Origin: Dimorphilus gyrociliatus
Taxonomy: Eukaryota > Animalia > Annelida
DNA length: 64,000 nt
Direction of reading: 5' to 3'
Assembly: GCA_904063045.1 (NCBI GenBank)
Contig: CAJFCJ010000001.1
Coordinates: 2,356,001-2,420,000, forward strand
Position numbers and translations under genes: made by a program. How positions within the stretch are numbered: position 1 is the stretch's first letter; each line of letters starts with the position of its first letter. Positions 35,301 through 45,612 of this stretch are shown in pieces. The notes under the pieces are model-generated. The model did no database searches and had not been told where the DNA came from. It worked only from the letters and a program-made list of their open reading frames with translations.

Positions 35301-38300
35301 AATTAAATTTGATGAAGCAAGCCTTAAAAGAAAACAAACAAAAACAAAGATTTCAAACAATAAATTCAAATTTTATGTATTTGTTGGAAAAAAAGGCATA
35401 AAATTTCGAATTTATATGATAAATGCAACGACAATTGGAAGTAGTATGCATACAATTCCAAATGTAGTAGAAGCAACACCGTCCATCACATCAAAATCAC
35501 GCAGACGCGGTTTATAGGATTTGTTTGCCTGCGCAATTTCAAAGATGAAAATAGAGGCGATAATTACCAAAGCTATAAAACATAGTAGTGTATATGTATA
35601 CATAAGAGAAAACAATATTAATATTCATATAATAATAATAATAATACTTACTAAAAAAGACAAGCGATTTCATTCCAATGGTTGTAGTGTTTTGATCGTT
35701 TGTATTTTAGTATCTTTTACTATACATTTATACTTGTTTTTTAACAAGAAAATGACATATAAAAGATATAATTATATAATTTCAGTCAAATTATTCCATA
35801 TCCTAATAATAAGAAAACGGGACAAAGCGAAAAACTTAATATATTTATAATTTTATTTACAATTACAGATTTCAAATTAAAGTACCTAGGCGTAATGTCG
35901 GTCCAAGTAGCACTCAACTTTATATGGTAAGAACTATGCTGGAAAGTTTAATATCGGATAAATCCGGTGGTAAAAAGACAATCAGAAAGGATATTGATGG
36001 AGCTCATTTGATGACAATTGATGAATTTCATAAAAAATCTTATTTTTGGCCTTATTTACTTAATTTCAACGATACTATTCAAAATTGTTGCGACCTATCC
36101 CAATTATGGTATAGAGAATTTTTTCTAGAAATGACTATGGGAAAGAGAATTCAATTTCCCATTGAAATGTCTATGCCATGGATTTTAACCGATCACATAC
36201 TTGAGAGGCAAGATTACTCAATGATGGAATATATATTATATCCATTAGACTTATATAATGATTCTGCCCATTATGCACTTCAAAAATTTAAAAGACAATT
36301 TCTTTACGACGAAATTGAAGCTGAAATGAATTTATGCTTTGATCAATTTGTTTATAAACTAAGCGAAATGATATTTTCTCATTATAAACACTGGGCTGGT
36401 AGCGTTATGCTAGATAGAAGATTCAGGGCTGACTGCTTTGCACTTGGAACTGTCATACCCCAATCTAGTCCCAATCGATATACGTAAGTATTATTGAATT
36501 TCTTCTTGTAACAAAATTTCAATTTATTTATTATACTTTCTCTCCCATATAGGACTTTACTCAGACAACGACATATTCAAATTTTAGGTCGATCTATAGA
36601 CCTTAATCGTTTAATTGGTCAAAGAATTAATGTTTCTCTTCAGCGATCATTAGATGTTGCTATAAATAAATTTGAAAGTAGCGATATAACTGGAATAATT
36701 GAACTGGAAGGACTCATTGAAGTTAACCGTCTATGCCATAAGTTTTTGAGCAAATATCTCAGTTTATCAGAATTCGACGCCATGTTCCGCGAAGCCAATC
36801 ACAATGTGTCAGCACCTTATGGACGAACTACTCTACATGTTTTCTGGGAATTAAATTATGACTTTTTACCAAATTATTGTTACAATGCAGCTACTAATCG
36901 ATTTGTTAAAACTGCAATGTCATTTACAAAACCCAATCCAAGAGATAAGTTAGCCAGCGTCGCTCACCACTACCTTTGGGGTACCAAAGCTTTAACAATA
37001 TCATTCGGCGCCATCTATGGTTTATACAGTGGCTTCGTTGGACCTTCTCACTTCAGAGCCATCTGTAGACTATTGGGATATCAGGGCATTGCAGTGGTTA
37101 TAGAGGAACTTTTGAAAATTATAAAATCCTTAGTAAGTCTCTTTCGTTTCTGAACGATAGATTACTAATAGAGAAAACGAAACTTTTTTCTTTTTTAAAG
37201 TTACAAGGATCGCTAGTCGAATATGTTAGAAAGTTAATGCCTTTGATGCCAAACGTTTGTGGGTTGGTGAGAACCGATAAAGGATCAGAAGGTAAACGAA
37301 TTACTAATTAATTTAAATAATCATTTACTTTGATTATCAATTTATATATAGGTGCTTTACACTACTATTATGCTCAGTTAAGCGAAGTTTTAAAATTTAA
37401 CGATTTAAGAACTGAAGTCTTGCAAAGTTTCCGTGAAATTGGTAACGCTATTCTATTCTGTTTATTGATTGAACAGGCTTTGGTAAGGATATATATTTCT
37501 CTATAAAATTTTCAATTATAGAATTAATTAATGAATTATGTTTTTCTAGTCGCAAGAAGAAGTTTTAGACTTAAAACATGCAGCACCTTTCCAGAATATT
37601 ATACCAAAACCGTTCTTACAATACAAGGAGGGAGAGTCGAAGAGAGAAAGAGAAGCAAATATGAGAGCGATGATGAAAAAATTAGAAGCACGTTACGCCG
37701 CTCTACAAATTGTACCATTAATATCAAAACTTGGAACACAAAAACAGGCGGATTTAGCCGCCGAAGGCGATTTATTAACAAGAGAGAGATTATGTTGCGG
37801 TCTATCAATGTTTGAAATTGTTTTAACAAGAATAAGATCGTTTTTAGAAGATCCGATTTGGCATGGTATGGTTCCACCAGCTAACCACGTGATGCACGTT
37901 GACGAATGTGTTGAATTTGAAAGATTGTGGAGCGCAATTCAATTCGCCTATTGTATGCCAGTCACCGACAATGAATTTACTATTGAGTAAGTTTGTCAAA
38001 TATATAATAAAATGTACAAATTATCAATAATTGTGCATTTCTTTATAAAGGAAACTATTTGGAGAAGGTCTAAATTGGGCAGGATGCGCTCTTATCGTTC
38101 TTCTTAATCAACAAAGACGATTCGAAGCATTAGACTTTTCGTATCATCTTCTGACCCTTAATAGAATTGATCAAAAGGACGAAGTTTGTCGTGGGATACC
38201 TCTAAAGAGAATGGTTGACAGAATAAGAAAATTTCAAATTCTCAACAATCAAATTTTTGCTATTCTCAACAAATACTTGAAACCGAATGAGGCTAATGAA

Positions 38301-38375
38301 AGCCTACCTTTCGAACATGTTAGGTGCTTCCAACCTCCAATGCTTCACAGGGCTAATGGCGTATTAAGATCGTAA
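32370..38375 (+). CDS. CYFIP: Cytoplasmic FMR1-interacting protein (Sra-1/PIR121), canonical copy, ~17 exons
   Basis: Near-verbatim CYFIP motifs: [93 protein letters not shown]-terminal VRCFQPP. Confidence 0.97.
35412..35673 (-). CDS. Nested 60-aa micropeptide gene (signal peptide + 19-aa polar core + hydrophobic C-terminus; putative GPI-anchored glycopeptide); exons 35673-35652 and 35572-35412
   Basis: ATG exon MKSLVFF ends in a consensus a|gtaagt donor; the 79-bp intron ends ttttatag| in matching phase 1. Product: [60 protein letters not shown]. Lies antisense inside CYFIP intron 35289-35868. Confidence 0.7.
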
Positions 38376-43200: not shown

Positions 43201-45612
43201 AACATAACAAATCGGAATATGTAGAGTACGTCTTCTACGCGTTTGATTTGTATAATGATAGTGCCGATTACGCTCTCAACGTTTTCAAGAAGAAGTTTCT
43301 ATACGAAGAGATTGAAGCGGAAGTGGATCTTTGCTTTGAACAGTTCTTATACAAACTGTGCGATCATATGTACAACTATTATAGGACACTAGCTGGAAGG
43401 TAGGAACTATAATATATATATATAATATATATAATTGTGAATATTTTCAGTTTAACGTTAAAATCATATTTGGGAAATCACGTGACTAAAAAATTAAGCA
43501 AAGATTTACGTATACACGCCAGAAGGAATTTCTTACCGCTTCTTAGTCAAACGAATATAAGAGTAAGTTATTTTAAAAGAATGTTAACTTATTAATTAGT
43601 TGAATAATTTTATTTTTTAATTAGCTATTAGGACGTAATATTGATCTAAAGAGAAGAATTTCACAAAGATTGAACATGTTCTTTAGTCGTTCGTTAGAGA
43701 ATGTTCTACACTATTTTGAATCGGTTAATTTACACACCATATGCGTAAGTATACAACATTACTTTATTTAATTATTAATTAAGTAATTAATTAGTTAATT
43801 ACTTCTATATATGATTATTATTATTTATAATTTTCCCTTCTCTTTCTACTTAGGAAATCGAAGGTATAATAAATGTTACTAAATTAGCTCATAAGCTTAT
43901 TTCCGAGCATATTACGCTTACTCCATTTGAACATCTTCTACAAATGGCAAGATATGATTCGAAAAGTGACAGATGTCGAATTGCTCAAAGAATTGTACAA
44001 TGCGTTACGGATGATTTACCACTTTACGCTTATAATACGTCAACGGCAAGATTTGTCATGTCGGAGATAAGATCGAAAACTGAAGAAGCTAGAATTAGTA
44101 AGGAAAAGGGAGGTAAAGAAGATAAAAGACGATTTATGGATCATAGAGATTCTTGGGGTAGTAAGGAGCTGGTAGACGCTTTTAGAATTATATATTTGCC
44201 ATACACTAACTTTATAGGATTACCACATGCCGTTAGCATTTGTAACTTTCTTGATTATGCTGGAATAAGCTATTTACTAGAAGAATGTGTGAAATTTATT
44301 GAAAAGTCTCTAAACGATATTATAATGCCGTTTGTTCGGTCCATTAAGAAAGCGTTACCACCAGAGGGAATAAAACTGCCTAGGTACATTACTTTTATAG
44401 GAAAGAATGATAATAATTAATAATTCTCTTCCAACAGATACGAATATGGTCACGTTGGCGCGTTCACTAAATTTAGAACGGCTTTTGTTCATATACTTAA
44501 ATTCGATTTATCGGATTTGTACGAAGCTTTAGCGGGAGCCGGAAATTGTTTAGCATTCTGTCTAATTATTACGGAAAATGTATTTGTAAATGAAACTAAT
44601 AGTATTAGATTGGGTGGATATTTTTGTAATAATTTACCTACACCCTATATTGAACAAGATGAGAAATCAACTCATTCGAAAAAGAAAGCGGAAGCGTTAA
44701 AGAAATTGAAATACGAGAATAAAAATTGCTACGTTCGATTTGTTGCCGAAAATTTTAAGGAATTAAGCGACGATAGAAAGAAGTTAGTTAAACAGAATGA
44801 ATTATTAGAAAGAGAAAAATTAGTTTGCGGATTGAATATTTTCCCAAAAATTTTGGATAAATTAAAAAAGAAATTATGCCAAGAGAACGATAAGGATTTA
44901 TGGTTTGGAGATGAACCGGAAAATGGTATAATGCATATAACGAATTGTTCAGAATTTTATAGAGTTTGGAGTGTTTTACAATTCGTTTTCTCAATACCAA
45001 CAATGTCGGCCCACGCCGAAACTGTCGAGTAAGAATCTTGGTTTTTTCTTCTTCTTTTTTTTTATATATAGATCAATACATATAGTTTCTATTATTTTCT
45101 TCAGGGCATTGTACGGCGATGGTCTACAATGGATGGGATGTTCGCTTATACAACTTTTAGGACAGGAAAGGAAATTTGAAGTATTAGATATTTCCTATCA
45201 TATTGAGAAATTATACGAACCAGCTAAAGGCGGTACTAAAAATAAAATGAATGATCAAATGGTAACTTTAAAATTGATTCTATAATTAGATATTTAACTA
45301 GTACAAATGTAATTTAATCTTCTTTATTTTGCTTTTTTTTAACAGTATAATAAGTTAATGCAAAGAATTCGAGCAATGCATAAAATAAATAGTGAAATTT
45401 TTGGTATTGTTGGAAAGTACTGCTGTACTCAATCTCAACCGAAAGAATCAATTAAAAATCAGTTTGAGACCCCTTTAGAAAATGTTCATCATTTCGATCC
45501 ACCTTTGGAGATTGACTTAGATCAATCGTCGGCAATCTCAATAAAAACTTCATTAAATGTGGTATCGGATGAAGTTGAACCTCCAAAACAAAAGGTTGAA
45601 ACTGAAGTTTAG
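40233..45612 (+). CDS. Divergent CYFIP paralogue with a long N-terminal proline-rich extension, multi-exon
   Basis: Exon 1 (40233-41028) carries polyPro and then a segment aligning to the CYFIP N-terminus. Next exon [26 protein letters not shown]. Also [50 protein letters not shown]. Confidence 0.9.

What the first reader, a model, noticed from the sequence alone, without database searches (positions are those of the whole stretch)
37240..44460. The Rac1 D-site motif is lost in the conserved CYFIP but retained in the divergent paralogue
Known: human CYFIP1 binds Rac1 at an A site (C179, R190, F626, M632) and a D site around PKICRLPRHEY967GSPG971 (numbering from memory). Seen: the canonical copy, otherwise close to vertebrate and fly CYFIP, reads [15 protein letters not shown] (37249-37291; R961G, P963V, Y967K equivalents). 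The paralogue reads GIKLPRYEYGHVG (44367-44460). Both keep the R190, F626 and M632 equivalents. Inference: subfunctionalisation of WAVE-complex activation, giving one complex with A-site-only input and a second that keeps two-site Rac1 input.
Basis: partly seen in the sequence, partly recalled or inferred. Interest (0 to 1): 0.72.

Follow-up and report, generated by a model that had tools for sequence, protein, structure and literature searches.

The report
CYFIP pair with split Rac1 D-site
A tiny marine worm has two copies of the actin-regulator CYFIP: the well-conserved copy has replaced the key tyrosine of its high-affinity Rac1 docking site, the divergent copy has kept it, and a second species shows the same pattern.

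Summary
The genome has only two CYFIP genes, and both lie in this window. At the human Rac1 D site, the conserved copy reads G961/V963/R964/K967. The divergent copy reads K961/P963/R964/Y967.

Among 165 invertebrate CYFIPs, Y967 and a basic residue at 961 are each present in 164. Of 293 near-invariant columns the conserved copy breaks 8, and Y967K is the only radical change.

A related species, about 77% identical in DNA with saturated synonymous sites, carries the same two states. Both genes are under strong purifying selection (dN 0.07 and 0.09). A spliced transcript confirms the paralogue and its D-site splice junction.

Three points need correcting:
- P963 is often L in annelids and other spiralians, so V963 is a mild change.
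- The paralogue has K, not M, at position 632, and its second D-site patch has changed (F975K).
- Part of the paralogue's WCA-clamp is altered (L841Q, F844V, W845 gap).

D-site cores are also lost in Schistosoma and acoels. The genome has one Nap1 locus and one Abi locus. A loss of D-site docking in the conserved copy is well supported. Clean subfunctionalisation into two WAVE complexes is unproven.

The parts
32370..38375 (+). Conserved ('canonical') CYFIP gene, with about 17 exons and short introns
   Evidence: PF05994 matches. About 73% identical to the annelid-like CYFIP P0243. Groups with annelid CYFIPs in the tree. Intron map.
37201..37291 (+). Conserved copy, D-site exon A: human 941-970 plus the first base of G971. 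Reads ...[14 protein letters not shown].
   Evidence: The relative has the same apart from T965S.
37352..37482 (+). Conserved copy, D-site exon B: G971, then ALHYYYAQ..., equivalent to human 971-1014. This second D-site patch has the normal invertebrate form.
   Evidence: Identical in the relative.
33490..33540 (+). Conserved copy, A-site helix: N176, S179, N183, S186, R189 and R190 equivalents
   Evidence: ORF translation, compared with the human residues printed. Alignment.
36119..36139 (+). Conserved copy, F626 to M632 equivalents, both kept ([10 protein letters not shown])
39033..39167 (+). Paralogue non-coding first exon and promoter block. It is 88% identical to the relative and contains the palindrome GGCCAATATTGGCC.
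   Evidence: Its last 15 nt equal the 5' loose end of the transcript contig.
40233..45612 (+). Divergent CYFIP paralogue, coding region. Exons: 40233-41027 (proline-rich arm), 41096-41113, 41296-41373, 41439-41540, 41616-43397, 43449-43562, 43625-43744, 43854-44383, 44438-45028, 45105-45260, 45345-45612.
   Evidence: A spliced 4864-nt contig with 0 mismatches in run X3. Exon ends read from the sequence. PF05994 matches. About 40% identical to P0243.
44367..44383 (+). Paralogue D site, first part: G I K961 L P963 R964 (the R964 codon is split by the intron)
44438..44480 (+). Paralogue D site, second part: Y965 E Y967 G H V G971 A F T974 K975 F R T978 A979
   Evidence: The relative reads YEYGHIGAFTKFRTS.
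41745..41789 (+). Paralogue A-site helix: N176, T179, N183, T186, K189, R190
   Evidence: Identical in the relative.
43134..43136 (+). Paralogue K at the M632 position
43960..44000 (+). Paralogue WCA-contact stretch (approximate coordinates): RIAQRIV-QCV in place of [11 protein letters not shown], i.e. L841Q, F844V and a gap at W845
   Evidence: The residue set is defined in PMC6264382.

Best explanation
The window holds the only two CYFIP (Sra1/PIR121) genes of this small annelid genome.

Shown:
- In the common ancestor of this worm and a clearly separate relative, the conserved gene replaced the core of the high-affinity Rac1 docking patch. K/R961 became G and Y967 became K, with further changes at 965, 970 and 972.
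- The A site, the second D-site patch and almost every other invariant residue were kept.
- The new state has been held under purifying selection.

Inferred from human mutagenesis, where Y967A and R961D/P963A/R964D abolish D-site binding:
- A WAVE complex built on this copy can still be switched on by Rac1 at the A site.
- It has lost, or greatly weakened, Rac1 docking at the D site.

The divergent neighbour gene is transcribed and constrained. It keeps K/R961, P963, R964, Y967 and G971, and the A-site arginine anchor. It has changed the flanking aromatic 975, M632 and part of the WCA clamp, and it carries a proline-rich arm.

The paralogue may therefore supply D-site-type Rac1 docking. It is not a simple two-site version of the conserved copy, and a causal link between the two states is not established.
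For: - Residue mapping to the human protein.
- Definition of the D site and mutational effects: PMC9481577 and PMC5614565.
- Conservation: Y967 and K/R961 each in 164 of 165 sequences; 8 of 293 invariant columns deviate, and only Y967K is radical.
- Annelid and other spiralian outgroups keep K-L-(L/P)-R-Y-D/E-Y-G-S-P-G.
- The relative has GLVRSDKGSEG in the conserved copy and RLPRYEYGHIG in the paralogue.
- dN is 0.068 and 0.092 against pS of about 0.7.
- Spliced transcript of the paralogue, and 10 of 12 differences at third codon positions in a roughly 97% identical metatranscriptome contig.
- The Rac1 orthologue keeps F37, D38, N39, W56, Y64 and R66.
- Only two CYFIP loci and no alternative exon.
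Against: - No binding or structural test was possible. K967 could make new contacts, for example with Rac1 D38, which normally pairs with R961.
- Transcription of the conserved copy was not examined directly, because the single read-laying run covered only the paralogue.
- D-site cores are also missing from Schistosoma and acoel CYFIPs, so loss may be tolerated without a paralogue.
- The age of the duplication is unresolved.
- The mutational data come from human WRC, not annelid WRC.
Confidence: 0.6

Rival explanations
1. One reading: clean subfunctionalisation into two WAVE complexes. One has A-site-only Rac1 input (conserved copy). The other has full two-site input (paralogue).
For: - The two copies hold complementary states at 961 and 967, fixed in two species.
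- Both genes are constrained.
- The paralogue keeps N176, N183, K189 and R190.
Against: - The paralogue has M632K, F194N, F975K and changes at L841, F844 and W845.
- M632D and the WCA* set are functional mutations in human Sra1.
- The genome has a single Nckap1 locus and a single Abi locus.
- The D site is not an activating input.
- D-site loss also occurs in other lineages.
Confidence: 0.2
2. D-site erosion in the conserved copy is unrelated to the paralogue. The D site only tunes docking and is dispensable for activation, so it was lost under relaxed need, as in flatworms and acoels.
For: - PMC6264382 reports that D-site mutants still form lamellipodia.
- Schistosoma, two acoels and two unnamed divergent CYFIPs lack Y967.
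- Tubulanus has two CYFIPs and both keep Y967.
Against: - Those other lineages are fast-evolving throughout. Here the gene is otherwise highly conserved, and Y967K is its only radical change at an invariant column.
- The new residues are themselves conserved across saturated synonymous divergence.
Confidence: 0.3
3. The patch is remodelled, not lost. G961 and K967 move the positive charge and still bind Rac1, or bind another GTPase such as the second Rac-like protein found in this genome.
For: - The altered motif is conserved between species.
- R964, G968, S969, G971 and the whole 973-980 helix are kept.
- A second Rac-like gene exists (L017).
Against: - The Y967-F37 stacking that forms the core of the interface cannot be made by lysine.
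- Rac1 F37 and W56 are unchanged.
Confidence: 0.15
4. Artefact: assembly error, mis-splicing, or an unnoticed alternative exon that carries a normal D site.
For: None found.
Against: - The same residues and the same GT..AG intron appear in independent assemblies of another species.
- The flanking introns are only 60-62 nt long.
- A genome-wide search with a normal D-site segment finds only these exons.
Confidence: 0.01

Closest known systems
Human CYFIP1/Sra1 in the WAVE regulatory complex (PDB 3P8C, 7USC-7USE)
   Same: - Both copies match PF05994.
- Both align colinearly with human CYFIP1 over the exons tested.
- The A-site arginine anchor K/R189-R190 is kept in both.
   Different: - The conserved copy has G961, V963 and K967.
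- The paralogue has K632, K975 and an altered 841-845 stretch, plus an N-terminal extension within the 265-aa proline-rich first coding exon.
Engineered D-site mutants Y967A, G971W and R961D/P963A/R964D (PMC5614565, PMC6264382)
   Same: The conserved copy is a natural equivalent. It lacks Y967 and the basic 961 while the A site is intact.
   Different: The changes are natural and fixed under selection. The substitutions are K and G rather than A and D. The effect on binding was not measured.
Schistosoma rodhaini CYFIP (P0007) and acoel CYFIPs (P0327, P0328)
   Same: They also lack Y967 and other D-site core residues.
   Different: Those proteins are divergent throughout. Whether these species have a second copy that retains the site is unknown.
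Tubulanus polymorphus divergent CYFIP1-like (P0008, 1523 aa)
   Same: - It is a second, divergent CYFIP beside a conserved one.
- It has a proline-rich N-terminal extension.
- It has a basic residue at 632 (R).
- It keeps Y967.
   Different: - It keeps L841, F844 and W845.
- The conserved Tubulanus copy keeps its D site.
- Orthology to the worm paralogue is neither supported nor rejected.
Plant PIR121
   Same: PMC5614565 states that P963 and Y967 are conserved in eukaryotes 'except plants', so WRCs without this motif exist.
   Different: This is a distant lineage and the whole site differs. No paralogue contrast is described there.

Membership tests
CYFIP / Sra1 / PIR121 (Pfam FragX_IP PF05994 plus CYRIA-B_Rac1-bd PF07159) | FragX_IP domain match above the gathering score | tested here: met
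   Both loci match. The conserved copy scores 622 bits across its exons. The paralogue scores 355 and 204 bits. Single exons give E-values of 2e-106 and 9e-95.
CYFIP / Sra1 / PIR121 (Pfam FragX_IP PF05994 plus CYRIA-B_Rac1-bd PF07159) | N-terminal CYRI-like Rac1-binding domain (PF07159) | tested here: inconclusive
   Single exons give only sub-threshold matches: 14.6 and 16.3 bits against a cut-off of 23.1. The genome-wide scan is blank. Colinear alignment to human 131-719 is strong for the paralogue.
Rac1 A site of Sra1 | R190 anchor with K189, N176, N183 and S186, a small residue at 179, plus F626 and M632 | tested here: met
   For the conserved copy all are kept, with S179 and R189. The paralogue keeps the core (N176, N183, K189, R190, F626) but has T179, T186, N194 and K632. 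It therefore meets the feature only partly.
Rac1 D site of Sra1 (aa 961-978) | Core patch K/R961, P/L963, R964 and Y967, with G971 | tested here: not met
   The conserved copy has G961, V963, R964, K967 and G971. The paralogue meets this feature with K961, P963, R964, Y967 and G971.
Rac1 D site of Sra1 (aa 961-978) | Second patch 974-979, with an aromatic residue at 975 | tested here: met
   The conserved copy has H974, Y975, A978 and Q979, which is the invertebrate norm. The paralogue does not meet it, with T974, K975, T978 and A979.
WAVE regulatory complex subunit | WCA-sequestering contacts L697, Y704, L841, F844 and W845 | tested here: inconclusive
   The conserved copy keeps L841, F844 and W845; L697 and Y704 read as kept on the exon translation but were not aligned. 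The paralogue keeps L697 and Y704 but has Q841, V844 and a gap at 845.
WAVE regulatory complex subunit | Assembly with Nap1, WAVE, Abi and HSPC300 | not testable with these tools
   Only gene counts are available: one Nckap1 locus and one Abi locus.

The most novel reading that the evidence does not exclude
Dinophilid annelids have naturally split the two Rac1-related functions of CYFIP between two proteins. The housekeeping CYFIP keeps only allosteric A-site activation. A proline-armed paralogue with a loosened WCA clamp keeps the high-affinity docking patch, and acts as a separate Rac1-recruited actin module or as a second, differently regulated WAVE complex.
Probability: 0.15. Interest if true: 0.7.

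Novelty: new variant of a known kind. Interest (0 to 1): 0.45.

Why it matters
The role of the D site is still debated. It binds Rac1 40-100 times more tightly than the A site, yet it does not activate the complex and it is dispensable for lamellipodium formation.

This worm offers an otherwise highly conserved animal CYFIP that replaced the central tyrosine and kept the replacement under selection. Beside it sits a paralogue that retains the tyrosine. Together they form a natural separation-of-function pair.

The pair could be used in rescue and reconstitution assays to ask what D-site docking contributes. It also shows that D-site loss has happened several times in animals.

It remains a sequence-level inference of moderate interest until binding is measured.

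Tried and rejected
- **Full-length proteins of this worm.** They could not be obtained as database ids. The length filter of the word search excludes full-length CYFIPs for exon-sized queries. With full-length queries the worm's own proteins did not reach the top 120.
- **Third word search.** It was meant to find the relative's C-terminal exon. It found another annelid-like contig (L011) that starts just after the first D-site patch. The relative's D site was reached instead by exact look-up of a neighbouring exon product.
- **Tree placement of the paralogue.** It sits on a stem of 1.8 substitutions per site. The quick free search was worse than both constrained trees. These were sister to the worm's conserved exon (+18.0 lnL) and sister to the Tubulanus divergent copy (+15.7 lnL). 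Neither is rejected, so the age of the duplication stays open.
- **PF07159 genome scan.** Blank.
- **Rfam and tRNA scans of the intergenic conserved block.** Blank. The block turned out to be the paralogue's non-coding first exon.
- **Structure and complex prediction.** Not run. The D site straddles an intron in both genes, the single exons are too short to fold meaningfully, and the Rac1 exon found lacks its first 36 or so residues.
- **Joined sequences.** dN/dS was summed from per-exon codon comparisons.
- **Artefact or alternative-exon explanation.** Rejected.
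Full report
**What is in the window**

The window is AT-rich (about 30% G+C) with introns of about 60 nt. It belongs to a 77.9-Mb assembly. An earlier agent's note names the species as the annelid Dimorphilus gyrociliatus. That species has a published genome of 73.8 Mb (PMC7854359). I did not verify the name independently.

A genome-wide scan with Pfam FragX_IP finds only two CYFIP loci, both here and both on the + strand.
- The conserved copy runs from 32370 to 38375 and has about 16 short introns.
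- The divergent copy has its coding region at 40233-45612.

**The observation**

The conserved copy's exon 37201-37291 aligns without gaps to human CYFIP1 941-969. The next exon aligns to 973-1014. The paralogue's exons align to human 797-964 and 965-1145.

Residue by residue, given as human / conserved copy / paralogue:

| Position | Human | Conserved copy | Paralogue |
|---|---|---|---|
| 961 | R | G | K |
| 962 | L | L | L |
| 963 | P | V | P |
| 964 | R | R | R |
| 965 | H | T | Y |
| 966 | E | D | E |
| 967 | Y | K | Y |
| 968 | G | G | G |
| 969 | S | S | H |
| 970 | P | E | V |
| 971 | G | G | G |
| 972 | I | A | A |
| 974 | E | H | T |
| 975 | F | Y | K |
| 978 | H | A | T |
| 979 | Q | Q | A |

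**What the literature says about these residues**

The D site is residues 961-978 (PMC9481577).
- R961, R964, Y967, E974, F975 and H978 contact Rac1.
- Y967 stacks on Rac1 F37.
- P963, I972, G971 and F975 form the pocket.

Y967A and R961D/P963A/R964D abolish observable binding even under favourable conditions. The 974/975/978/979 quadruple mutant only weakens binding. P963 and Y967 are described as conserved across eukaryotes except plants (PMC5614565).

The D site binds 40-100 times more tightly than the A site but does not activate the complex. It is dispensable for lamellipodium formation, although it is needed for normal lamellipodium morphology (PMC6264382).

**Is it unusual?**

I collected 165 full-length ecdysozoan and spiralian CYFIPs and read the same 26 residues in each.
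- Y967 is present in 164 of 165. The exception looks misaligned.
- K/R961 is present in 164 of 165.
- Position 963 is P in 120 and L in 41. The annelids Owenia and Ridgeia have L, as do several molluscs and nemerteans. V963 is therefore a mild change in context.
- Positions 974-979 in invertebrates are typically G/E/Q-Y-Y-Q/H-A-Q. The conserved copy's H-Y-Y-Y-A-Q is ordinary.

In an alignment of 155 full-length CYFIPs, 293 columns are at least 97% conserved. The conserved copy deviates at 8 of them. Seven changes are conservative (D/E, R/H, V/M, K/R, P/S, L/F, K/R). The eighth is Y967K.

The paralogue keeps 173 of 260 covered invariant columns. It is about 40% identical to an annelid-like CYFIP overall.

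**A second species**

The best match to the paralogue in the 1.84-billion-protein library is an 88%-identical fragment from Logan assemblies. Its contigs come from an organism about 75-80% identical in DNA. A further contig, found by exact look-up of a neighbouring exon product, is about 77% identical.
- Its conserved copy reads [15 protein letters not shown]|ALHYYYAQ, with the same intron.
- Its paralogue reads EGIRLPR|YEYGHIGAFTKFRTS.

Summed over per-exon codon comparisons:

| Gene | dN | Amino-acid identity |
|---|---|---|
| Conserved copy | 0.068 | 90% |
| Paralogue | 0.092 | about 69-92% per exon |

Synonymous differences are saturated in both (pS about 0.7). Both genes, and both D-site states, have therefore been kept under strong purifying selection since before these species split.

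**Transcription**

A 4864-nt contig of run X3 matches the paralogue with no mismatches. It is spliced at every predicted intron, including 44383|44438, and it joins the proline-rich first coding exon to the CYFIP body.

A marine metatranscriptome contig about 97% identical is spliced at the same D-site junction. It shows 10 of 12 differences at third codon positions, and none within the motif.

**Other functional sites**

The conserved copy keeps N176, a small residue at 179 (S), N183, S186, R189, R190, F626, M632, L841, F844 and W845.

The paralogue keeps N176, N183, K189, R190, F626, L697, Y704 and Y923. It has T179, T186, N194 and K632, and a 12-residue insertion beside E434. It reads RIAQRIV-QCV where others read [11 protein letters not shown], giving L841Q, F844V and a gap at W845.

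M632D disrupts A-site binding in human Sra1. L697D/Y704D/L841A/F844A/W845A is the constitutively active WCA* set. The paralogue is not a plain two-site CYFIP.

**Partners**

The genome shows one Nckap1 locus and one Abi locus. The Rac1 orthologue keeps F37, D38, N39, W56, Y64 and R66, so the Rac1 side of the interface has not shifted.

**Artefact check**

A normal D-site segment from another annelid-like CYFIP finds only the conserved copy's two exons in the whole genome. The flanking introns are 60-62 nt long. An independent assembly of the relative shows the same residues.

**Origin of the paralogue**

The two copies appear to share about four intron positions, near residues 73, 96, 130 and 1156. 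This comparison was done by hand and the phases were not checked. The paralogue lacks eight central introns and has some of its own, including a different position at the D site: codon 964 against codon 971. This points to a DNA-level duplication followed by intron loss.

In the tree the conserved exon groups with annelids, while the paralogue sits on a very long, unplaced stem. AU tests do not reject either a clade with the worm's conserved copy or a clade with a divergent Tubulanus CYFIP.

**Other lineages**

Schistosoma rodhaini, two acoels and two unnamed divergent CYFIPs also lack Y967. The nemertean Tubulanus has a conserved and a divergent CYFIP, and both keep Y967.

D-site loss is therefore recurrent in animals and not tied to a paralogue. 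Here, though, it occurs in a gene that is otherwise slow-evolving.

**Verdict**

The best-supported reading is a lineage-specific, selectively maintained loss or severe weakening of high-affinity Rac1 docking in the conserved CYFIP, with A-site activation intact. This rests on human mutagenesis and was not measured.

The paralogue keeps the docking core but has diverged at other functional surfaces. A division of labour is plausible. The clean two-complex subfunctionalisation model is not established.

Full-length spliced models were not joined, so no fold or complex prediction was made.

Noticed in passing
window 40233-41027; P0008 residues 1-200: The paralogue's proline-rich first coding exon lies on the same mRNA as the CYFIP body. 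A divergent second CYFIP of the nemertean Tubulanus polymorphus (P0008, 1523 aa) also has a proline-rich, then acidic, N-terminal extension. This is either an old spiralian paralogue or a convergence.
   Followed up: partly
window 39033-39167; L009:5541-5682: An intergenic block is 88% identical to the relative, which is more than the coding DNA. It contains the palindrome GGCCAATATTGGCC (two inverted CCAAT boxes). It ends in the 15 nt that form the 5' end of the paralogue transcript, followed by GTAAGT. It is therefore the paralogue's non-coding first exon and promoter. Rfam and tRNA scans found nothing.
   Followed up: yes
L009:54-4605 (- strand) against window 32361-37138: In the relative the conserved CYFIP gene alone is inverted. 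There the two CYFIP genes are head-to-head, about 0.9 kb from the conserved promoter block, and the TRPM-like neighbour keeps its place.
   Followed up: partly
window 41096-41113: The paralogue has an 18-nt microexon (KFITEM). It was inferred from the transcript contig's length bookkeeping and GT/AG sites. It was not found by similarity in the relative.
   Followed up: partly
window 41616-43397: The paralogue has a single 594-codon exon where the conserved copy has eight introns. It also has its own intron positions, including at the D site (codon 964 against codon 971).
   Followed up: partly
P0002, P0005 (Logan, unnamed): Two related divergent CYFIPs of unknown origin lack both Y967 and the F844/W845 WCA contacts.
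   Followed up: no
runs X1, X2 laid on window 39800-45700: Coral and marine metatranscriptomes hold contigs 90-99% like the paralogue. Close relatives of this worm therefore live in those samples.
   Followed up: no
window 27605-31489 (+), 46149-46820 (+), 46925-48058 (-): The neighbouring genes are a TRPM2-like cation channel upstream, then a GNAT acetyltransferase and a LicD-family protein downstream.
   Followed up: no
G000:C8:1112360 (L017): A second Rac-like GTPase exon ([33 protein letters not shown]...) lies elsewhere in the genome, besides the Rac1 orthologue on C19.
   Followed up: no
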